Of a stretch of DNA of 22,251 nucleotides, positions 2,273-21,633 are shown piece after piece. This DNA is from Octopus sinensis. Lineage: Eukaryota. A program made the position numbers and the translations under genes. The notes beneath the pieces are model-generated. The model searched no databases and was not told the origin of the DNA. It saw only the letters and a program-made list of their open reading frames with translations. Position 1 is the stretch's first letter. Each line of letters opens with the position of its first letter. The stretch covers positions 1 to 22,251 of the forward strand of contig NW_021836955.1 of assembly GCF_006345805.1 (NCBI RefSeq), written 5' to 3'.

Positions 2273-2307
<35 letters not shown>

Positions 2308-2520
2308 TGTAGTAGTAGTTGTTGTTGTAGTAGTAGTAGTTGTTGTTGTTGTTGTAGTTGTAGTAGTAGTAGTAGTAGTAGTTGTAGTAGTAGTAGTAGC
2401 TGTTGTAGTAGTAGTAGTAGTAGTTGTAGTAGTAGTAGTTGTTGTTGTTGTTGTTGTAGTAGTAGTTGTAGTAGTAGTAGTTGTTGATGTTGTAGTAGTA
2501 GTAGTAGTAGTAGTAGTAGT
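2248..2520. repeat. (GTA/GTT)n trinucleotide array 1
   Basis: Read directly; the source of the poly-V, poly-L/Q and poly-T ORFs. Confidence 0.98.
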
Positions 2521-3117: not shown

Positions 3118-3132
3118 GCAGTAGTAGTAGTG

Positions 3133-3203
<71 letters not shown>

Positions 3204-3312
3204 TGTTGTTGTTGTTGTGGTGGTGGTGGTTGTAGTAGTAGTAGTAGTTGTAGTAGTTGTTGTAGTAGTTGTAGTAGTAGTTGTAGTAGTTGTAGTAGTA
3301 GTAGTAGTAGTT

Positions 3313-3343
<31 letters not shown>

Positions 3344-3450
3344 TAGTTGTAGAGGTAGCTGTAGTAGTAGTAGTAGTAGTAGTTGTAGTAGTAGTTGTAG
3401 TAGTAGTTGTAGTAGTAGTTGTAGTAGTAGTAGTAGTAGTAGTAGTAGTT
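3118..3450. repeat. (GTA/GTT)n trinucleotide array 2
   Basis: Read directly. Confidence 0.98.
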
Positions 3451-3600: not shown

Positions 3601-4592
3601 AGGGTGCGTAAGGTATTTGAGGGCATACCTGTTTTGTGTCATCGCTACAGTTTTTGCTAACTCTGTATAATCTTTGTTTCAGAAAATAATAATGGCAGAT
3701 CCTCAGCTTACCAAAAAAATGAAGAGGCATGCTGTTATTGTGGTTATAAAGGCTGAGCATAGCGATTTAGACATATCTCAATTTTAAAAGGTTGCCAGAT
3801 ATTTCGTCTACAAAAGTTTATAAGGAGCTAGAGACTGAAGATGGAAACGTATCACCAGTATCAAAGCATAAAAAGCATTCTATACGTTCTGAAATCATCA
3901 GAACACTTGAATTTTTTCAGCAAGTTCAACAGACCATTGATTACAATCCCAGAAATCCATGAGGTCAATTGCAAAAGGTCTCCATGTGTCAGAAGGAACA
4001 GTTAGAATGTTGTCCACGAAGACATCAGCTTTAAGTCTTATCATAGGGCTATCAGCAATGAATGACGTGTGATGCTTCTTTACTTCTTTCCAGAAGGCCT
4101 TAGAATTAACTCTGCCGCCTACATTGAGGTCCTGAAAATAATTTTTAAGCCCTGGATAGACAGTGTATGCAATGGAAGGCCATATGTGTTTCAATAAGAC
4201 TCTGCAGTATCACACATGGCTCTATTAACACAGATGTGGATGACTGAAAATTTTCATAATCACATAACCCCTAACATTTGGCCTCCTAAATCCCCAGATC
4301 TCAATCCATCGGACTATTACATGTGGAGCGTTGTTGAAGGAGAGGTCAATGAACACTCCCATAACACCAAAGATTCTTTGAAAACTGCCATAGAGTAATG
4401 TCCAAAATGAACCAGGACCACTTGATTAGAGCATGTTGAAGCTGAAGGTGGCTTTATTGAATAACATTATAGAACAGGTTTATTTTTATCTTCATGGCAT
4501 TTTTTGATAGAAAAAGGTTATCATCTGTTATTATATATCTGTTTTTGTTTTTTAATAAGCATAAATCTGTCCTCAAATATCTTAAGCACCCT
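3601..4592 (+). mobile_element. Tc1/mariner superfamily DNA transposon, DD37D (maT) type, internally deleted and non-autonomous
   Basis: TIRs agggtgcgtaaggtatttgagggca (3601-3625) and tgtcctcaaatatcttaagcaccct (4568-4592) match at 22/25. Both sit in TA-rich flanks and enclose a decayed transposase. Confidence 0.9.
3692..4464 (+). pseudogene. Decayed DD37D transposase
   Basis: Frameshifted pieces: MADPQLTKKMKRHAVIVVIKAEHSD, MRSIAKGLHVSEGTVR..VVHEDI (HTH-like), YVFQ*DSAVSH, WPPKSPDLNPSDYYMW, AEGGFIE*. 37 residues lie between D(4198) and the D of PSDY. The region with the first catalytic D is missing at about 4055-4065. Confidence 0.88.
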
Positions 4593-5553: not shown

Positions 5554-5939
5554 TTGGAAAGCATTGTGAATATGTGCACATACTGTCACATTGAAAACTT
5601 TTGCCGAATTGCGTTCTACGGGGGGAAGCAATTGCATTTTCTACGCGTCTTCGAGCGCACGCTCACACAAGCGCGCGCGCGCACGCACACACACACACAC
5701 ACACACAGATGCACATGTATAATGAAAAAATAAATGACAAAAGAACGGGTATCATGCAATCACATTCATTGGCCTCCGGATTTTCCGCTCTGGCTGTTTC
5801 CAGCTGTAAGCCAATGAATATTATTACATAATTACTTTTCTTTTGTCATTCATTTATTTATCAATATTGTTGGCTCGCCTATTTGAGCGCTCAGATTGCA
5901 TACCTATTAGGTTGAGTCACTCTGAAGAAAACTCCTAGC

Positions 5940-6382: not shown

Positions 6383-6490
6383 TACTAGCTTAAAAGCTGC
6401 CCTATCGAGTGGCCTTTTCTGCTAGCTCCTTGAAGGGCTTTTCATTAAGTTTTGGTCCTAACGACACTTCATGTATTGAGTACATACTCA

Positions 6491-6894
6491 TTTACTCTTT
6501 TATTTGTTTCAGTCATTTTACTGCGGCCATGCTGGAGCACCGCCTTTAGTCGAGCAAATCGACCCCAGGACTTATTCTTTGTAAGCCAAGTACTTATCCT
6601 ATCGGTCTCTGTTGCCGAACTTGCTAAGTTACGGGTACGTAAACACACCAGCATCGGTTGTCAAGCGATGTTGGGGGGACAAACACAGACATAGACATAT
6701 ACACACACACATATATATATATACATATATACATATGTACAACGGGCTTCTTTCAGTTTCCGTTTACCAAATCCACTCACAAGGCTTTGGTCGGCCCGAG
6801 GCTTTAGTAGAAGACACTTGCCCATGGTGCCACGCAGTGGAATTGAACCCGGAACCATGTGGTTGGTAAGCCAGCTACTTACCACACAGCCACT
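6491..6894 (-). mobile_element. SINE family A, near full length, with internal microsatellite
   Basis: On -: tRNA head (tggctgtgtgg A box, ggttcaattcc B box), CORE-like accatgggcaagtg, internal (TA)(TG) tract about 6690-6738, 3' module and gtaaaagag-type tail. It resembles Octopus tRNA-derived CORE-type SINEs (from memory). Confidence 0.95.
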
Positions 6895-7597: not shown

Positions 7598-7651
<54 letters not shown>

Positions 7652-7661
7652 GCATTCGATA

Positions 7662-8503
7662 TACAAGTGGTTTGAAATAAACAACATGCAGTTTGATGCA
7701 GGAACTTAGACTCCAATGTTTTTACAGGGGATCACACTGTAAGGTAAAAAAGGCTATAAGAGGGATCATGTTGAGTGGGTATAGAGGCAAGTATACGGCT
7801 AAGCAAATTGGGTACATCAGTATTGTCATGGTGATACCTACTCAGAGGCCGACGGTAGAAAGTGTATGGAGAGGAGTGTATGAGCTGTATACAAGTGTAC
7901 GATGGTTCAAACGTTTCCAAGATGGCCGAAAAATGTCGATATTAACGAACGTTCTGGGAGACCCGCAACCAGCAGAACTGAGAAAAACATCGCAGGTGTG
8001 AGTGCAGCTGTGAGGGGAAATCGTTGAATCACCATCCGTGAGTTATCAGAGGATGTGCAGATTAGTTACAGTTCAGTTCAGTCCATCATCGTTGAAGATT
8101 TGGGTATGAGACGTATGTCTGCCAAGTTTGTGCCAAAACTGCTTTCAGCTGACCTAAAAGTCACTCCCGTTTCAGTTGCACAAGATCTCCTTGACTGGAT
8201 CGAGAACGATGAGAACGTTTTGAAAACTTTGCGTAGGTTTCTGAACAGGCATCACCAAGCATTTGACAAAATCTGATGCAGATTCTCAGCTCAATTTTCT
8301 CTGTCATGGTCAATGCGACGATCACACGTTACACACCTTCCTTCCAAGCATTGCTGTAAACAGCGGTAGTGAACTAGAACGTTAAAACTTAGTGCGCTTG
8401 CACAACAGAGTTTGAGGTCAATCTGTGCCAAGCGGCTTTACTCTGAGTGCTTTAGCTTCGTTGCTATATCAACAGTCCGGACACTTATTGATCAAACCAC
8501 ATA
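7662..8503. mobile_element. Mariner-type relic: TIR, 5' UTR and transposase N-terminus on -, the next transposase segment inverted on +, catalytic domain absent
   Basis: Minus 8307-8227: MTEKIELRICIRFCQMLGDACSETYAK. Plus 7857-8227: KVYGEECMSCIQVY/WFKRFQDGRK/NVDINERSGRP..ITIRELSEDVQISYSSVQSIIVEDLGMRRMSAKFVPKLLS (WVPHEL-like). A TIR-like end cacttattgatcaaaccaca-TA lies at 8482-8503, with a weak counterpart gtggtttgaaataa at 7667-7680. Confidence 0.88.
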
Positions 8504-8523
8504 TGTATGTATTTATATATATA

Positions 8524-8567
<44 letters not shown>

Positions 8568-8604
8568 TATATATATATAATTGTCATTTATTGTGTAAAC
8601 CCTA

Positions 8605-8774: not shown

Positions 8775-11500
8775 TGTTTGACTTTTTCTTTGTATTAGTA
8801 CAAGTTGACTCCAAGTCACACCCAGAGACCTCAAGAGACAACAAGTTAGAAGAAGTTCAAGCTTGTGTTATGTCTAGGGTGTCATATATTTAGTTTTGCA
8901 AATAGCATTGTTCTAAAGAATGTTTAAGAAAACAAGGAAATTATAAGTTTGTTTTAAAATTTGAGATTACAAAGAGAGTATTTTACATAGGATATGGACA
9001 GTTCCCATGAGCACTATCTTTTGAATTTCCTCCATTTTGGGGTTTCCTGATATCTGAGCTAGGTAGGAATCAGACCCGTTTGCTATCATTCCTAGGGCAT
9101 TTATGACAACAGGTATTGTTTTAGTGTTGAGGTTCCACATTTCTATTTCAAGATCTTTATACTTGTTCAGTTTTTAGTAGGTCTTGACAAATACATTTAT
9201 GTCAATTGGGACAGTCATATCAATGAGGTGGCATGATTTTTGTCTGATGTCTTTCAATATAATGTCTGACCTATTTGCATCTCTCTTTATGTCAGTTTGA
9301 ACGATGAAGTTCTAAAGGAGTGAGATGTTATCATTTTCAAGCACTGGAGGTGGTTTATGTTCCCACCAGTTTTTATCATAGGACAGGGCCAGGTTTTTAT
9401 AAATTACCTAGTGAATATACTGTGCTGCTCTATCATGCCTGTTGAGATACTCTGTAGGCGCAAGAAGACTGCACGTGGAGACTACGTGATCAATGGTTTC
9501 ATCTTGTTGTTTACGTACACATGTTAGGCTACTGCCGTTCTTTAATATGTTGGCCTGGTATTTCCTTGTAGGCAGACATTGATCTTGAGCTGTTATGATA
9601 AACCCTTCTGTTTCTGATTTTAAGCCAGAAGACTTTAACCGTTGATAGGTAAGGACTTTGTCAACATCGGCATTATTAGCTCTTTTGGGGTATTTGCTAT
9701 TGAGAGGTTTTTCTTGTCATTTATCAAAAAGAATATCTAAGACACCAGTTTTAGCACGGGTTTTCATACGCTTAGTTTTTTCTGTGCTTGTTTCCAGTAC
9801 GCATAATTCTGGGATTTGTTGTATTTGGAATTCACTTAGATATTCCTTTGCCTCTTTTGTTACTGAATATGATGCTTTCTTGTTTTCGTGCTTTAAGACA
9901 AGTTTTTCAGATAGGTGTGTAGGCCAACTGTGGCATTTTTCATTGTTAATTCCAGTTGTAAAAGTCCACGCTCACTCTTTTTTCTTGGCAGGTAAATTCG
10001 TTCTATATCTACCTTAGAGTGGTGCATTCTACACATTGTCAACAATTTTCGTATTTTTCTGTCAAGATTACCTATTTCAGTAACTGACCAGTTAATGATA
10101 TTGAAACTGTAAATCACGACCGGTATGACTAAAGTGTTGATCGTTTCGATCTTGTTTCTTGCATTCAGCTCTGTCTTGAGTATTTCTCTTACCCTGCGAT
10201 AACATCCTCATCATTGAATGTTTGATTCCATTACCTTCAAATACTCCTAGGTATTTGTAGCTCTCCGCTGTTTCTCACTCCTTTATGATATTCTGCTGGT
10301 CAAGATTAAAGTTGGATGTTTCTGTCTTTTTTCCTTTGATAAAGGTAGAGTTTGCATATTTATCGAGGCCAAATTTCATTCTGATGTCATCAGCGAATTG
10401 CTTAACAATTGCTAGTAAGCCCTGTAGTTGTTGGTCATTTTTTGCAAAGAGCTTTAAATTATACATGTAAAAGAGATGATTTATATTTTTATCAAACATT
10501 TTAGAGCCATATTGTACATCATTGAGCAATTTCGAGAAGGTATTAAGGTCAGACAAAAGAGGAGTGGTGATAGAGAGTCACCCTGGAAAATGCCTCATGA
10601 AATTCTTACATCTCCAGCATTGAGAGATTCATTGTCACTGTTCAAAGTCAGTGTGGTTCTCTATGATCTCACACTTACAGACAAGAAGCTTCGCAGAGTA
10701 GGTGCTATTTTATACATTTCCAGAAAACTTCTTAATCCAGCTATGTGGTAGACTATCAAAAGCGTCTTTTATTGTCTACCCATGCTGTCGACAAGTTTTT
10801 GTGTCGTTTGCGACAATCTTCCAAGATCATCTTGTTGATGAGTAACTGATCTTTACAACCATAGTACCAACGTTTACATCCTTTTTGCTCATTAGGGAAT
10901 ATGCCACTTTCTATTAAAAAACTACAGGTATATTTAGTCAAGACAGATGTTAGCACTTTATACATTGTTGTTAAGCAGATTATGGGTCTATAATTTTTAG
11001 TTCATTTGTTTCTTCATATTTTGGAAGTAGGAATGTAAGACCATTAACAAGCCAAGAGGAAATCATACTAGGTTGTTGCAAAGCATTGTTGTAAAGTTTT
11101 GTTAGCAGTTCATGACTCTCTGAGAAAGCATTCAACCAGAAGTTAGGAATTTTATCCTTTCCTGGAGACTTCCATTTACTTGACTTCCTGAGAGCAGATC
11201 TTACATCCTCTATTTTGATAACCACCCACGTTTGCTCTTCTGAGGGGTTTAAGTCAGTAGATATTCTATCAATCCAAAAGGCCTTTTTATTGTGTTTTTT
11301 TCTTTGCGCCCAAATTTTATTCCAAAATTCCTGTAATACTTTTGATGGGACAGACTTTACTGTAACTGGTATTTTCCCTATCTTCCTGTAAAAATTTTGC
11401 AGCTTCCTGTAAAAGTTTTTGCAGCTTTAGCAGTTACCTTTTGCTTGATGGTTTCTATGGTGGTATCGATGTCAAGTGTGGTTTTCATATAATTTTTTCT
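8774..11500 (-). mobile_element. 5'-truncated non-LTR retrotransposon, R4/Dong-like clade (RT + CCHC + restriction-like endonuclease)
   Basis: Motifs in correct order on -: KWKSPGKDKIPNFWL; EQKGCKR..GCKDQLLINK..AWVD; GIFQGDSLSPLLF (about 10561-10595); HLFYMYNLKLF (YMDD degenerated); KFGLDK; DIERIYLPRK..RGLLQLE; degenerate CCHC ..ETIDHVVSTC..RHD; NRSDII..LIDMTVP..KYKDL. Stop at 8967-8969, then a ~190-nt 3' UTR ending in (TAA)n. Confidence 0.92.
8967..11480 (-). pseudogene. Disrupted reverse transcriptase / RLE polyprotein
   Basis: Multiple stops and frameshifts. ORFs 9893-10117, 10275-10556, 10756-10965 and 10980-11225 of the track are its fragments. Confidence 0.92.
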
Positions 11501-11745: not shown

Positions 11746-11781
<36 letters not shown>

Positions 11782-11784
11782 CTG

Positions 11785-11972
11785 TTTACACTCTGTTACT
11801 TGTTTCAGTCATTTGACTGCGGCCATGCTGGAGCGCAGCCTTTACTCAAACCCCGGGACTTATTCTTTGTAAGCCTAATACTTATTCTATCGGTCTCTTT
11901 TGCCGAACCACTAAGTTACGGGGATGTAAACACACCAGCATCGGTTGTCAAGCGATGTTGGGGGGACAAACA

Positions 11973-12062
<90 letters not shown>

Positions 12063-12226
12063 GACGACGGGCTTCTTTCAGTTTCTGTCTACCAAATCCA
12101 CTCACAAGGCTTTGGTCGGCTCGAGGCTATAGTAGAAGACACTTGCCCAAGGTGCCACGCAGTGGGACTGAACCCGGAACCATGTGGTTGGTAAGCAAGC
12201 TACATCCACACAGCGACTCCTGCGCC
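11785..12226 (-). mobile_element. SINE family A, full length, with internal (CA)n(TA)n at about 11975-12062
   Basis: High similarity to 6491-6894 and 12841-13340; the 5' end ggcgcagg is intact at 12226. Confidence 0.95.
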
Positions 12227-12270
<44 letters not shown>

Positions 12271-12840: not shown

Positions 12841-13075
12841 TACTCTTTACTCTTTTACTCTTTTACTTGTTTCAGTCATTTGACTGCGGCCATGCTGGAG
12901 CACCGCCTTTAGTCGAGCAAATCGACCTTGGGACTTATTCTTTTGTAAGCCCAGTACTTATTCTATCGGTCGCTTTTGCCGAACCGCTAAGTGACGGGGA
13001 CGTAAACACACCAGCATTGGTTGTCAAGCAATGCTAGGGGGACAAACACAGACACACAACATATACACATACACT

Positions 13076-13133
<58 letters not shown>

Positions 13134-13340
13134 ATATATATATATATCTATATATATATATATATATATACATCTACTATTACAGGCTTCTTTCAGTTTC
13201 TGTCTACCAAAATCACTCACGGCATTGGTCGGCCCGGGGCTATGGCAGAAGACACTTGCCCAAGATGCCACGCAGTGGGACTGAACCCGGAACCATGTGG
13301 TTGGTTAGCAAGTTACTTACCACAGAGCCACTCCTGCGCC
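12841..13340 (-). mobile_element. SINE family A, full length, with long internal (TA)n (about 13055-13172) and tandem (gtaaaaga) tail
   Basis: Both halves align with the other A copies; intact 5' end. Confidence 0.95.
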
Positions 13341-13357
13341 TATATGTTTACAAATGT

Positions 13358-14221: not shown

Positions 14222-14375
14222 GTTGACAACGACGACGACTACTACTACTACTACTATTTCTACTACTACTGCTACTACAACTACTACTACTACTGCTACT
14301 ACTACTACTACCACTACTACTACTGTTGCGACTACAACAACAACAACTTCTACTACTACTACTACTACTACTACA

Positions 14376-14419
<44 letters not shown>

Positions 14420-14612
14420 ACTACTACTACCATTACTACTACTGTTGCAGCTACTACTTCTACTACTACTGCTGCTGCTACTACTACCACTACTACTACT
14501 GTTGCGACTACTACTACTACTACAACTACTACTACTACCATTACTACTACTGTTGCAACTACTACTACTGCTGCTGCTGCTGCGACTACGTCTAGTACTA
14601 CTACTGCTGCTA
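14222..14612. repeat. (CTA)n/(CTG)n compound trinucleotide array
   Basis: Read directly; the source of the poly-T/L/S/Y ORFs. Confidence 0.97.
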
Positions 14613-14642
14613 CTCATTCATTTTTTTTTTTCTTCCTAGAAA

Positions 14643-14853
14643 TTAATCCTTTCTACTATAGGCACAAGGCCTGAAATTTGTGAGAAGGAGACTAGTCGAT
14701 TACATCGACCCTCATCGTTTCACTGGTACTTAATCTATGAACCTCGAAATGATGAAAAGCAAAGTCGACATCGGCAGAATTTGAACTCAGAACGTAAGAA
14801 CGGGCGAAATACCGCTAAGCACTTTTGTGGCGTGTTAACGATTCTGCCAGTTC
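14643..14853 (-). mobile_element. SINE family B copy (tail type 2)
   Basis: agtcgattacatcgaccc..aaagtcgacatcggcagaatttgaactcagaacg..aacgattctgccag; B box gagttcaaatt on -. Confidence 0.9.
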
Positions 14854-15790: not shown

Positions 15791-16033
15791 TAAAATAAGG
15801 ATTTAGATAGAATCGGGTATTTGAAAAGATATGCACCAGGTAGGGTTGGATAAACCAGTGGTTCCAGCCTATGGCTGATAAATAGAAAATAGGATAATCC
15901 GGTTGTGCACACAGAGAAAACCAGCCCTAAGTGTATTTAGCGCTTAGATGCTGGTCCAAAGCACGCGTTACGCTGATTGTACGTTGTTGGTTTAGAGTGT
16001 GCGACAAGTCGTAAATCCTTTCGTGTATTATAA

Positions 16034-16394
16034 TCAAATGAATAATAACAGACGATGGATAGTTGTCAGCTCGTTACAGCTGTTCTTACGCATTTTTTTA
16101 TAGGAGAAAGAGAACATTACTCCATTACAAAAAGCCGTAATCATCAGATGAAACATAATTTTTGCAAACAAAAGAATTTCCCAAGAATACGGCAGAAACG
16201 TGGCTGAAGTCTGTCGAGGCTCACTATGAAAGAATTAGGCCTCGACAGACTTCAGCCACGTCCCTGCCGTATTCTTGGGATATTCATTTTGGTGAAATGA
16301 CGATTACGGTTTTTTGCAATGAAGTAATCTTCTCATTCTTCGAAACAGCTGTAATGAGCTGACAATTATCCTTCGTCTGTTATTTTTCATTTGA
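16034..16394. repeat. Long imperfect inverted repeat (foldback), ~361 bp, 16-18 nt loop
   Basis: 16198-16220 is the exact reverse complement of 16239-16261. 16179-16220 vs 16239-16280 pairs at 40/42. The outer arms stay colinear to tcaaatg (16034) / catttga (16394), with two left-arm insertions. Confidence 0.95.
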
Positions 16395-16415
16395 GCATAG
16401 ATATATATATATATA

Positions 16416-16565
16416 CGACGGGCTTCTTTCAGTTTCCGTTTACGAAACCCAGGCTTTGGTCAGCCCGAGGTTATAGTAGAAGACACTTACCCAAGATGCC
16501 ACACAGTAGGACTGAACCCGAAACTATGTCGTTGGGAAGCAAGCTTCTTACAACACAACCATGCC
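16416..16565 (-). mobile_element. SINE family A, 5' half only, bounded by (TA)n on both sides
   Basis: cgacgggcttctttcagtttccgt..agaagacactt.cccaag.tgcc..ggactgaacccg matches the family A 5' half. Confidence 0.9.
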
Positions 16566-16600
16566 TATATATATATATATACATATGACTAAATGAACGT

Positions 16601-16790
16601 GCGGAACGACTAAATGAACATTTGAGACAATATGACGATAAAAAAACAGTCCTCCATACTCTACCAACATGCCAAGGACCAATATGGAGGCAACCTGACA
16701 TCCGCATCTTATCCAAGCACCCAAAAGATCTAACACTCAGACAAATACAGGAGTACGTCCTCATAAATGAAACTTCGCCAATTTAATTGG
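16601..16790 (+). pseudogene. Fragment of a GIY-YIG endonuclease C-terminus, Penelope-like element type
   Basis: With two compensating frameshifts: AERLNEHLRQYDDKK/QSSILYQHAKDQYGGN/PDIRILSKHPKDLTLRQIQEYVLINETSP. This fits the R..EH...S.L..H...IL......R.I.E..I...P pattern of PLE GIY-YIG domains. Confidence 0.65.
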
Positions 16791-17123
16791 AAATATACAT
16801 AGTAGATATCATACCCCCATACCCACAGTTTATAGAGGTAGAGTAGAATAGTTATGTAGATAGATATATGCATGTGTGCGTATGGGTGTAGTATATATGT
16901 AGATATAGTATATAGTATATATAATATAATATATATATATATATATAATATATATATATATCTATATATATATGTATTGATAATTGTATATATAATGAAC
17001 TTTACAGAAGTTCCTACCGTTAATCGGCTATATTTACATACCGAATTCTACCAGTAAATAATTGTTGGTTTCTTTAAAAACCATTATAGAAATTATTTAC
17101 TCTTATTATATTATATATATATA

Positions 17124-17817: not shown

Positions 17818-18230
17818 TAAGTAGCTTGCTTACTAACCACATGGTTCCGGGTTCAGTTCCACTGCGTGGCACCTTGGGCAAGTGTCTTCTACTATAACCT
17901 CGGGTCGACCAAAGCCTTGTGAGTGGATTTGGTAGACGGAAACTGAAAGAAGCCCGTCGTATACATGTATATATATATGTGTGTGTGTGTGTATGTATAT
18001 GTATATATGTATACATTTGTGCGTCTGTGTTTGTCCCCCCCAACATTGCTTGACAACCGATGCTGGTGTGTTTACGTCCCCGTAACTTAGCGGTTCGGGA
18101 AAAAGAGACCGATATAATAAGTACTAGGCTTACAAAGAATAAGTCCTGGGGGTCGATTTGCTCGACTAAAGGCAGTGCTCCAGCATGGCCACAGTCAAAT
18201 GACTGAAACAAGTAAAAGAGTAAAAGAGTA
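17818..18230 (+). mobile_element. SINE family A, slightly 5'-truncated, with internal (TA)(TG)
   Basis: Best sense-strand view of family A; B box gggttcagtt and tail gtaaaagagtaaaagag. Confidence 0.95.
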
Positions 18231-18394
18231 TAAAAGTGGGTAGTTGTTGGGTAGCAGACGATGATTATTGAATCTGCTCAAAAGGAGTTGAACTGAGGCT
18301 AACCAACAACCTTCATCACAAGCCAACGAGACAGCTTGTACGGGGAAGCTTACGATCCGGATATAGCAGCGAAAGTTCCCTCAACTAACACCTT

Positions 18395-18911: not shown

Positions 18912-19232
<321 letters not shown>

Positions 19233-20000: not shown

Positions 20001-20289
20001 GTTTTGTTTCAGTCTCTGGACTGCTGCCATTCTGGGCACTGCGTTCAAGGGCTCAGCCAAACAAATTGACCCCAGTACTAATTTTTAAAGTCTGCTTTCT
20101 TTTATCGCTCTTATGCGGACGTAAACAAACCAACATCGGTTGTCAAGTGACGGGCTTCTTTCAGTTTTCGTCAACCAACTCCACTCACAAGGCTTTGGTT
20201 GACTCGGGATTATACTGGAAGACACTTGTCCAAGGTGCCGCATTGTGGGACTGAACGCAGAGCCATGTGGTTGGGATGCAAACAGTTTA
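20001..20289 (-). mobile_element. Diverged SINE family A copy lacking the internal microsatellite block
   Basis: The 3' and 5' halves join directly at ggttgtcaag|tgacgggcttc. Confidence 0.85.
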
Positions 20290-20672
20290 GCTCGCTTTGC
20301 AACTACATGGTTTCAGGTTCAGTCCCACTGCATGGTATCTGGGGCAAGAGTCTTCTACTAGCTCCGCGCCAACCAGTGCTTTGTGATTGATTTTGCTACA
20401 TGGAAACTGTGTAGAAGCATGTTGTATGTGTATGTCTGTGTCTGTGTCAGCGTGTGTGTGTGTCTGCGCGCGCTTGTGCTCGCTTGACAACCGTTGTTGG
20501 TTTGCTTACGTCTTCGTAGTTTAGCAGATTCGACAAAAGTGTACAAAATAAGTACCAAAATTTAAAGCGGAAAAACATGTACTGGGGGTCGATGTGTTCA
20601 ATTAAACCCGTGAAGGCGATGCCCCAGTATGGCCGCAATCCAATGACAGAAGCAAGTAAAAGATAACAGATA
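20288..20672 (+). mobile_element. Diverged SINE family A copy, head-to-head with the previous one
   Basis: tagctcgctttgcaactacatggtttcaggttcagtcccactgc..ggggcaagagtcttctac..(TG)..gcttgacaaccg..ggggtcgat..caagtaaaagata. Confidence 0.85.
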
Positions 20673-20835: not shown

Positions 20836-21069
20836 TTATTTCTTTATTGCCCACAAGGGGCAAAACATAGAAGGGACAAACAAGGACAGACAAACGGATT
20901 AAGTCGATTACATCGACCCCAGTGCGTAACTGGTACTTAATTTATCGACCCCGAAAGGATGAAAGGCAAAGTCGACCTCGGCGGAATTTGAACTCAGAAC
21001 GTAACAGCAGACGAAATACTGCTAAGCACTTCGCCCGGCGTGCTAACGTTTCGGCCAGCTCGCCGCCTT
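20836..21069 (-). mobile_element. SINE family B, full length, best-preserved copy (tail type 1), with target-site duplication
   Basis: Intact tRNA-like head (A-box-like tggccgaaacg, B box gagttcaaatt) and central gtcgactttgcctttcatcctttcggggtcgataaattaagtaccag domain (MetaSINE-like, from memory). TSD ataatatagcaattc (20821-20835) vs aaaatataacaattc (21070-21084), 13/15. Confidence 0.95.
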
Positions 21070-21159
21070 AAAATATAACAATTCATCGGTTAAATAACGA
21101 TCCTGACGTATCACATAGGTCAAAAGATATTACAAGAGATTTGAAGAACGCATATTTAA

Positions 21160-21375
21160 ATATCCTTTCTACTATAGAGAAGGCTTGGAATTTTGGGTGA
21201 AGGGGCTAGTCGATTACATCGACCCCCGTGTTCAACTCGCACTTATTTTATCGGCTCCGAAAGGATGAAAGGCCAAGTAAACCACGATGGAATTTGAGCT
21301 CGTAACATTAAAACGGACGAAATGCCGCTAAGCAGTATGTCCAGAGTGCTAACGATTCTGCCAGCTCGCAGCCTT
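21160..21375 (-). mobile_element. SINE family B copy (tail type 2)
   Basis: atcctttctactatag..gtcgattacatcgacccc..gctaacgattctgccagctcgcagcctt. Confidence 0.9.
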
Positions 21376-21444
21376 GACATGTATTTAAATGTCAAAAACC
21401 TAATTTCATTGTCTTTTCATCACTTAATGTTTCACATTATGAGG

Positions 21445-21633
21445 GAGCTGAGCTGGCAGAATCGTTAGTGCGCCGAGAGAAATGCGTAGCAGCGTTTCGT
21501 CCGTCTTCACATTCCGAGTTCAATTTCGGGGGTAGGATAAGTCGGGAGTGTTCAGCTGATGCTTATTTTATTAACCTGACGAAAGGATGGCAGGCAAAGT
21601 CAACCTCAGCAGGATTTGAACTCGGAATGTAAG
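21445..21633. mobile_element. Rearranged family B copy: head on + (21445-21526), body on - (21527-21633)
   Basis: The head gagctggcagaatcgttag..gagttcaa is followed by the reverse-strand body aaaggatggcaggcaaagtcaacctcagcaggatttgaactc. Confidence 0.85.

What the first reader, a model, noticed from the sequence alone, without database searches (positions are those of the whole stretch)
16029..16399. Unexplained 360-bp palindrome (foldback) in otherwise non-repetitive sequence
Seen: the arms 16034-16220 and 16239-16394 are reverse complements over their whole length, apart from two ~15-20 nt insertions in the left arm. They resemble none of the SINE, LINE or mariner sequences in the window, and TA dinucleotides flank both ends (16029-16030, 16398-16399). 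The six outer-arm transition mismatches I checked split evenly (three G.U on +, three on -), which does not favour either strand as a selected RNA stem. Inference: a foldback/MITE-like element of unknown family, or a snap-back duplication. Either could extrude a cruciform or give a long hairpin RNA (endo-siRNA or ADAR substrate) if transcribed.
Basis: partly seen in the sequence, partly recalled or inferred. Interest (0 to 1): 0.8.

Follow-up and report, generated by a model that had tools for sequence, protein, structure and literature searches.

The report
Decayed 371-bp palindromic repeat in octopod DNA
The 371-bp palindrome is real and old, sits in repeat-rich octopod DNA, and is most likely a dead hairpin-shaped mobile element or a local inverted duplication with no sign of a selected function, so it is ordinary for this genome.

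Summary
The palindrome is real. The arms, 16029-16220 and 16239-16399, are 89% complementary (149/167 aligned positions). An 18-nt loop separates them, and the left arm carries two extra blocks of 16 and 14 nt. Both strands fold equally well (-209.7 and -210.4 kcal/mol, z about -22). The 18 mismatches are 10 transitions (4 G.U on +, 6 on -) and 8 transversions. That fits neutral decay rather than a maintained RNA stem.

The window is octopod DNA: its SINE matches Argonauta hians at 80-90% identity. It is full of SINEs, microsatellites and other inverted SINE pairs. The arms match nothing else in the window, no protein, no Pfam family and no Rfam family above threshold.

Arm divergence (K2P 0.117) implies an origin of roughly 16 My at most. 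This effectively rules out an assembly artefact.

The best reading is a dead palindromic, MITE-like DNA transposon copy inserted at a TA-rich site beside a SINE tail. A local snap-back duplication is almost as likely. Copy number is the decisive test, and it could not be run because no octopus genome was reachable with these tools.

If the locus is transcribed, the hairpin would be a passive ADAR hyper-editing substrate. An endo-siRNA role is disfavoured in molluscs. Interest is low.

The parts
16029..16220 (.). Left arm of the palindrome (192 nt, 36% GC)
   Evidence: It aligns to the reverse complement of the right arm at 89% identity. The ungapped cores are reported.
16085..16100 (.). 16-nt block present only in the left arm (an insertion here, or a deletion in the right arm)
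   Evidence: Gap in the arm-to-arm alignment. It is an unpaired bulge in both folds.
16147..16160 (.). 14-nt block present only in the left arm
   Evidence: Gap in the arm-to-arm alignment. It lies in an internal loop in the folds.
16221..16238 (.). Asymmetric 18-nt central spacer (loop), TCACTATGAAAGAATTAG
   Evidence: It lies between the innermost paired bases, GAGGC and GCCTC.
16239..16399 (.). Right arm of the palindrome (161 nt, 40% GC)
16029..16030 (.). Left TA, a candidate 2-bp target-site duplication
   Evidence: Read directly from the sequence. It is ambiguous: the ATA at 16030-16032 and 16397-16399 fits equally well.
16398..16399 (.). Right TA, a candidate target-site duplication, continuous with the (TA)n tail of the neighbouring SINE
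16400..16565 (-). Context: a tRNA-derived octopod SINE copy in minus sense, whose (TA)n 3' tail (16400-16417) abuts the palindrome
   Evidence: It is 76-84% identical to five or more other copies in the window and is aligned with them. The family matches Argonauta hians DNA at 80-90%. This copy is 10.9% diverged from the six-copy consensus.

Best explanation
The segment 16029-16399 is a dead, non-coding, palindromic (hairpin-type) miniature DNA transposon copy of a family I could not identify. It is MITE-like and possibly mobilised by a Tc1/mariner-type transposase that targets TA. It integrated into a TA-rich site next to the simple-repeat tail of an older SINE in an octopod genome.

Since then the two arms have mutated independently: about 5.8% per arm, roughly 16 My or less on the octopus neutral clock. 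One arm has gained, or the other has lost, two 14-16-nt blocks.

The element does nothing actively today. As DNA it is a hairpin- or cruciform-prone site. As RNA, if a host transcript or a read-through transcript covers it, it would fold into an imperfect duplex of about 170 bp. Octopus ADARs would be expected to hyper-edit and unwind such a duplex.

Shown: the structure, its age, the absence of coding or RNA-family signal, the neutral mismatch pattern and the octopod origin. Inferred: its mobility, the TA target and the fate of any RNA.
For: Element-like structure:
- The inverted repeat covers the whole element, which is 371 bp long with an 18-nt loop.
- There is no ORF above 66 aa and no Pfam hit.
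- The central 67-aa translation has no protein homologue.
- The left-arm 52-aa ORF has only one hit among 1.84 billion representatives, and it is spurious.
- Complementarity stops sharply at both ends, and the flanks are unrelated to each other and to the arms.
- TA lies at both ends.

Context:
- The mariner relic at 7652-8500 in the same window also sits between (TA)n runs, so TA-rich tracts do host TA-targeting elements here.
- Arm divergence is K2P 0.117, which is 0.058 per arm, or about 16 My at 0.0036 per My (rate from PMC13282606). That is close to the reported burst of TIR elements at about 25 My in Octopus vulgaris.
- The abutting SINE copy looks older, at 10.9% from consensus. This fits an arrival of the palindrome after the SINE.
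- About 66% of the O. vulgaris genome is repeats, including Tc1-mariner and MITE families (PMC13282606).

No selected RNA stem:
- 8 of the 18 mismatches are transversions that break pairs.
- G.U-compatible mismatches split 4 on + against 6 on -.
- The fold energies of the two strands are equal.

There is precedent for a passive RNA role. The palindromic Harbinger MITE is the most hyper-edited repeat in Xenopus, and octopus has an exceptionally high fraction of dsRNA-forming loci (PMC5625713).
Against: - Only one copy is present in 22 kb.
- Multi-copy status, the defining property of a transposon family, could not be tested.
- The target-site duplication is only 2-3 bp in a TA-rich context and is not statistically meaningful.
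- Positions 16032-33 do not pair with 16395-96, so the ends are not crisp.
- The termini do not resemble those of the mariner relic in the window (p>0.28).
- The age comparison with the SINE is weak. It rests on a six-copy consensus, and the SINE is richer in CpG.
Confidence: 0.5

Rival explanations
1. It is a local snap-back (fold-back) inverted duplication. A unique segment of about 180 bp was copied in inverted orientation right next to itself, by template switching or hairpin-primed repair, possibly favoured by the adjacent microsatellite. It has decayed since. It was never mobile and is single-copy in the genome.
For: - It is single-copy in the window, and the arms resemble no SINE, LINE or mariner sequence there.
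- There is no convincing target-site duplication.
- No similarity to any transposase-bearing element was found.
- The short asymmetric spacer fits a turnaround point.
- The locus is next to replication-slippage-prone (TA)n tracts.
Against: - Both outer ends of complementarity coincide with TA, as expected for a Tc1/mariner-type insertion.
- The genome is about two-thirds transposon-derived, so the prior favours a TE (PMC13282606).
- Full-length palindromic MITEs of 80-400 bp are a common, well-documented class (PMC1784062, PMC5625713).
- Neither arm shows continuity of similarity into its flank. That is neutral between the two readings.
Confidence: 0.33
2. It is two independent copies of an unrecognised interspersed repeat of about 190 bp that happened to insert tail-to-tail 18 bp apart, like the inverted SINE pairs elsewhere in the window.
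For: Adjacent inverted pairs of SINEs occur at least twice in this window: 20149-20281 with 20288-20422, and 21290-21367 with 21450-21527.
Against: - Those pairs belong to families with 5-10 copies in the window. The palindrome arms have no third copy, so two chance neighbouring insertions of a rare family are improbable.
- Both the outer and the inner ends of the arms are in exact register.
Confidence: 0.05
3. It is a selected hairpin-RNA gene: a long hpRNA or miRNA-like precursor, or a dedicated ADAR-binding structure. It could be transcribed by Pol III read-through from the abutting SINE.
For: - The fold is very stable on either strand.
- On the minus strand the SINE has no T4 terminator. 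The first TTTT (16173 to 16170) falls just 3' of the inner near-perfect hairpin of about 48 bp, an shRNA-like layout.
- Several miRNA covariance models score on the central hairpin.
Against: - The miRNA hits come from many unrelated families, occur on both strands, and reach about half of each gathering score. That is generic hairpin signal. Nothing reaches threshold.
- The mismatches are strand-neutral, 8 of 18 break pairs, and there are two large bulges. There is no sign that the stem is maintained.
- A T4 run is expected about every 100 nt in DNA this AT-rich, so the terminator position is weak evidence (p about 0.1).
- The SINE copy is 11% diverged.
- No dedicated endo-siRNA pathway was found in molluscs (PMC12479628).
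Confidence: 0.05
4. It is an assembly or sequencing artefact, such as a chimeric strand-switch read or a missed hairpin adapter.
For: Palindromes with a short spacer are a known artefact shape in long-read and amplified libraries (my own knowledge).
Against: - The arms differ at 18 of 167 positions and by about five indels, including blocks of 16 and 14 nt. Arms copied from one molecule would be essentially identical after consensus.
- There is no adapter-like sequence at the centre.
Confidence: 0.03

Closest known systems
Palindromic MITEs of the Tc1/mariner superfamily, e.g. human Made1 (source of the mir-548 hairpins) and Stowaway-like MITEs (PMC1784062, PMC3814204)
   Same: It is small and non-coding. 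The inverted repeats make up nearly the whole element, so one copy folds into a hairpin on its own. TA lies at both ends. There is potential to yield hairpin RNA when transcribed.
   Different: - Made1 is 80 bp and this element is 371 bp.
- Family membership (many copies) and relatedness to an autonomous mariner are unshown.
- The termini do not match the mariner relic in the window.
- No miRNA-like conservation was found.
Palindromic Harbinger-derived MITE of Xenopus tropicalis (about 200-220 bp), the most hyper-edited repeat in that genome (PMC5625713)
   Same: It is a self-folding repeat with a short loop that needs no neighbouring inverted copy to form dsRNA. This is the best functional analogy for what would happen to this RNA in an ADAR-rich animal.
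   Different: Harbinger elements make TWA 3-bp duplications. Here TAA (16031-33) faces GCA (16395-97), so the feature is not met. The host lineage is different. Editing was not measured here.
Drosophila Foldback (FB) elements
   Same: Long inverted arms with a short or absent middle segment, and the ability to snap back.
   Different: FB arms are built from tandem subrepeats, are kilobase-scale, and carry 9-bp duplications. Here the arms contain no tandem repeats, there is no 9-bp duplication, and the whole element is only 371 bp.
Inverted SINE/Alu-type pairs that form editable dsRNA
   Same: They give the same kind of RNA duplex. Such pairs occur in this very window.
   Different: Those are two separate insertions of an abundant family. 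The palindrome's arms have no other copy in the window.
Drosophila hpRNA (endo-siRNA hairpin) loci
   Same: A long inverted repeat with a short loop.
   Different: hpRNA arms derive from target genes and give phased 21-nt siRNAs. Here there is no gene similarity, and molluscs appear to lack a dedicated endo-siRNA pathway (PMC12479628).

Membership tests
MITE (miniature inverted-repeat transposable element), Tc1/mariner type | Terminal inverted repeats | tested here: met
   The arms are 89% complementary along the whole element.
MITE (miniature inverted-repeat transposable element), Tc1/mariner type | Small size (under about 800 bp) and no coding capacity | tested here: met
   The element is 371 bp and its longest ORF is 66 aa. 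There is no Pfam hit and no real protein homologue.
MITE (miniature inverted-repeat transposable element), Tc1/mariner type | TA target-site duplication | tested here: inconclusive
   TA is present at 16029-30 and 16398-99. However, the right flank is a (TA)n run, TA is 10% of dinucleotides, and ATA fits equally well.
MITE (miniature inverted-repeat transposable element), Tc1/mariner type | Many dispersed copies in the genome | not testable with these tools
   There is one copy in the 22-kb window and none in 20 kb of Argonauta hians. No octopus genome is in the searchable DNA collections. The protein database has no ORF-called octopus assembly: a query built from the window's multi-copy SINE found only 2 proteins.
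MITE (miniature inverted-repeat transposable element), Tc1/mariner type | Ends related to those of an autonomous transposon | tested here: not met
   There is no significant similarity to the ends of the only mariner relic available, at 7652-8500 (p = 0.29-0.89). Other autonomous elements of the genome could not be tested.
Foldback (FB-like) elements | Arms made of tandem subrepeats, with a 9-bp target-site duplication | tested here: not met
   TRF finds no tandem array within 16029-16399. No flanking direct repeat longer than 4 bp is found, and that one is TATA.
PIF/Harbinger-derived palindromic MITE | TWA 3-bp target-site duplication | tested here: not met
   With the core at 16034-16394, the flanks are TAA and GCA. 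No TAA or TTA pair fits any boundary.
Known miRNA or other Rfam RNA family | Covariance-model score at or above the family's gathering threshold | tested here: not met
   There are no hits at gathering thresholds. In E-value mode, more than 10 unrelated miRNA models hit the central hairpin on both strands at about 25-57% of their thresholds.
hpRNA / endo-siRNA hairpin locus | Arms homologous to a target gene, with Dicer-phased small RNAs | tested here: inconclusive
   No gene or protein similarity was found for the arm translations tried. Small-RNA data are not available here. The literature reports no dedicated endo-siRNA pathway in molluscs (PMC12479628).
ADAR hyper-editing substrate | A long, nearly perfect intramolecular RNA duplex | tested here: met
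   The predicted imperfect duplex is about 170 bp, at -210 kcal/mol on either strand.
ADAR hyper-editing substrate | The locus is transcribed and shows clustered A-to-G mismatches | not testable with these tools
   No RNA-seq data are accessible.

The most novel reading that the evidence does not exclude
The hairpin is a functional RNA locus in an octopod. One possibility is an shRNA-like Pol III read-through product of the abutting SINE: the first T4 terminator lies right after the inner hairpin of about 48 bp. The other is a long hairpin kept as an ADAR-binding, hyper-edited structure. In both cases it would be more than inert transposon debris.
Probability: 0.05. Interest if true: 0.5.

Novelty: new member of a known kind. 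Interest (0 to 1): 0.15.

Why it matters
It matters little on its own. Self-folding repeats are one of the two ways genomes make the long dsRNA that ADAR enzymes edit. Octopus has an unusually high density of such loci and unusually active editing. A catalogue of self-palindromic octopod repeats would therefore help separate background hyper-editing from the recoding that makes cephalopods interesting. It would also improve repeat libraries, in which short MITEs are poorly covered. This single decayed copy shows no sign of selection and does not open a new question.

Tried and rejected
- Exact-pattern scans for three arm motifs in the metagenome, viral and prokaryotic genome collections found nothing. 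That was expected, since these collections hold no cephalopod DNA.
- Exact look-ups of the 66-aa ORF across the centre and of the 97-aa flanking ORF found neither on record.
- A homologue search with the central 67-aa translation found nothing.
- An HMMER search of the left-arm 52-aa ORF against 1.84 billion representatives gave one hit (E = 6e-6). It is to a tandem-repeat protein, 28% identical over 24 residues. I reject it as a repeat-inflated artefact.
- I tried to reach octopus DNA through the LINE RT. The best hits (64-67% aa identity) lie on contigs of ENA assemblies whose organism the record does not give. Those contigs share only the LINE with the window and lack its SINE.
- A SINE-peptide query identified the octopod origin (Argonauta hians). 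It also showed that the protein database holds no ORF-called octopus genome, so the negative searches say nothing about copy number.
- There is no wider palindrome: the flanks 15791-16028 and 16588-16890 are unrelated to each other and to the arms.
- Mariner-end similarity was rejected.
- The mir-132 hit (29.7 bits against a threshold of 52) was rejected as generic hairpin signal.
- The supplement of the O. vulgaris repeat paper holds no TE library.
- No paper in the library mentions both 'octopus' and 'foldback'.

Full report
**Observation.** The segment 16029-16399 is a genuine imperfect palindrome.

- A gapped alignment of the left half against the reverse complement of the right half gives 149 identities in 167 aligned positions, or 89%.
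- The left arm carries two extra blocks, 16085-16100 and 16147-16160, and there are three single-base indels.
- The central spacer is 18 nt and asymmetric, 16221-16238.
- The ungapped cores found independently are 16029-16084 with 16344-16399 (56 nt, 89%) and 16170-16220 with 16239-16289 (51 nt, 92%).
- As RNA the + strand folds at -209.7 kcal/mol and the - strand at -210.4. Shuffles average about -78 (z about -22).
- As DNA the fold is -125.4 kcal/mol, z = -19.6.
- A minus-strand self-BLAST of the whole window shows this is the strongest tight self-complementary segment by far: 231 bits against 63 for the next.

**Context.** The window is not 'otherwise non-repetitive'. It contains more than 50 tandem-repeat rows, many SINE copies, a degenerate LINE reverse transcriptase and a mariner relic.

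A peptide translated from the SINE hit a protein of Argonauta hians. The SINE DNA matches that Argonauta locus at 80-90% identity. The window is therefore octopod DNA, though I cannot name the species.

One SINE copy (about 16400-16565, minus sense) lies directly against the right end of the palindrome. Its (TA)n 3' tail runs into the terminal ...GCATA.

**What the arms are not.**
- They match nothing else in the window. A word-7 blastn gives no hit with E<0.08.
- They match nothing in the three foreign loci fetched.
- There is no ORF above 66 aa and no Pfam match.
- The central translation has no homologue.
- The left-arm ORF has only a spurious match, to a tandem-repeat protein, among 1.84 billion representatives.
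- Rfam gives nothing at gathering thresholds. In permissive mode, more than ten unrelated miRNA models score on the central hairpin, on both strands, at a quarter to just over half of their thresholds. That is what any clean hairpin does.
- The termini do not resemble the ends of the mariner relic at 7652-8500.
- The complementarity does not extend into the flanks.

**Selection and age.** The 18 mismatches are 10 transitions and 8 transversions. Of the transitions, 4 would be G.U on the + strand and 6 on the - strand. With the two bulges and the equal fold energies, nothing suggests that either strand's stem has been maintained.

The K2P distance between the arms is 0.117, which is 0.058 per arm. 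At the octopus neutral rate of 0.0036 per My used in PMC13282606 (taken from Albertin et al. 2015), that is about 16 My if the arms began identical. The figure is an upper bound for a MITE whose arms were never identical.

This divergence effectively excludes an assembly or library artefact, because such an artefact would have near-identical arms.

The neighbouring SINE copy is 10.9% from a six-copy consensus, so it looks older than the palindrome. This comparison is weak. The consensus is small, and the SINE is richer in CpG.

**Most likely nature.** I favour a dead palindromic MITE-like DNA transposon copy that inserted at a TA in a TA-rich tract beside the SINE tail (confidence 0.5). The reasons are:
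- the inverted repeat spans the whole element;
- the size is typical;
- there is no coding capacity;
- the ends are sharp and coincide with TA;
- the same window shows a mariner-derived element sitting between (TA)n runs;
- about 66% of the O. vulgaris genome is repeats, including Tc1-mariner and MITE families, with a TIR burst dated near 25 My (PMC13282606).

The weaknesses are real. I could not test copy number, which is the defining property. The TA duplication is not significant in this context, and ATA fits equally well. No autonomous partner was identified.

The main rival is a local snap-back inverted duplication (0.33). It predicts a single-copy sequence and an ortholog carrying one arm.

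Minor rivals are:
- two chance insertions of an unrecognised repeat (0.05);
- a selected hairpin-RNA gene (0.05);
- an artefact (0.03).

**How it would work.** The element does nothing actively. As DNA, a 371-bp palindrome with 11% arm divergence and an 18-nt spacer is only a weak candidate for cruciform extrusion. This is my inference from general knowledge of palindrome stability.

As RNA, any transcript covering it would form an imperfect duplex of about 170 bp. In animals, such structures are the main targets of ADAR hyper-editing. The palindromic Harbinger MITE is the most edited repeat in Xenopus, and octopus has an exceptionally high fraction of dsRNA-forming loci, 4.4e-3 of random 50-mers (PMC5625713). 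Repeat-derived intramolecular duplexes dominate editing across Metazoa (PMC9989829).

A survey that included O. bimaculoides found no evidence of a dedicated endo-siRNA pathway in molluscs. It suggested instead that editing may melt dsRNA (PMC12479628). The endo-siRNA reading is therefore disfavoured.

One curiosity concerns the minus strand. The abutting SINE has no T4 terminator there, and the first TTTT (16173 to 16170) falls just after the inner hairpin of about 48 bp. A Pol III read-through product would thus look like an shRNA. T4 runs are frequent in DNA this AT-rich and the SINE copy is old, so I treat this as a low-probability idea.

**Limits.** The DNA collections available hold no cephalopod genome. 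The protein database evidently holds no ORF-called octopus assembly either, because a query built from the window's multi-copy SINE returned only two proteins. The negative searches therefore say nothing about how many copies exist in the source genome.

Nothing here is surprising for an octopod genome. In this same window, inverted SINE pairs capable of forming dsRNA occur at 20149-20422 and 21290-21527, and also at 16451-16550 with 17818-17917. At best this is an undescribed member of a well-known class. Interest is 0.15.

Noticed in passing
window 16400-16565 (minus sense), tail 16400-16417: This tRNA-derived octopod SINE copy abuts the palindrome. It has no T4 run on its sense strand. The first TTTT downstream is at 16173 to 16170, just past the inner hairpin of the palindrome, so a Pol III read-through transcript would be shRNA-like.
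   Followed up: partly
window 7652-8500: This is an internally deleted mariner relic with a weak Mos1 HTH_48 match (E = 0.008). Its short terminal inverted repeats share the core GTGGTTTGA. It is flanked by (TA)n microsatellites on both sides (7625-7651 and 8501-8579).
   Followed up: partly
window about 9150-11230 (minus strand): This is a frameshifted, stop-ridden LINE reverse transcriptase. A stitched 157-aa translation is 64-67% identical to RT fragments on contigs of ENA assemblies whose organism the record does not give. Those contigs lack the window's SINE.
   Followed up: partly
window 21290-21367 / 21450-21527, with related copies at 1191-1345, 14694-14853, 20902-21077 and 21208-21383: A second interspersed repeat family is present here as a head-to-head inverted pair 82 nt apart (74% complementary). 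It is another potential dsRNA-forming locus.
   Followed up: no
window 20149-20281 / 20288-20422: Two copies of the main SINE lie in inverted orientation only about 6 nt apart (about 67% self-complementary over 219 nt).
   Followed up: no
window 6484-6881, 11779-12231, 12848-13345, 17818-18231: These are longer composite repeat units of about 420-500 bp. The SINE core is separated by an internal microsatellite from a conserved block of about 250 bp. The copy next to the palindrome and several others lack that block.
   Followed up: partly
window 5722-5773 / 5810-5861: This is a small inverted repeat in non-microsatellite sequence: 52-nt arms, 79% complementary, with a 37-nt spacer.
   Followed up: no
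window 2273-2520, 3120-3449, 14238-14614, 18912-19230: Four very long trinucleotide microsatellites, (GTA/AGT/ACT)n, have 83-126 units each, on both strands. They create long artificial ORFs.
   Followed up: no
window 3898-4194 (minus strand): This is a 98-aa ORF of normal composition with only a faint ParBc_2 match (E = 0.05). It may be a fragment of another mobile element or an exon.
   Followed up: no
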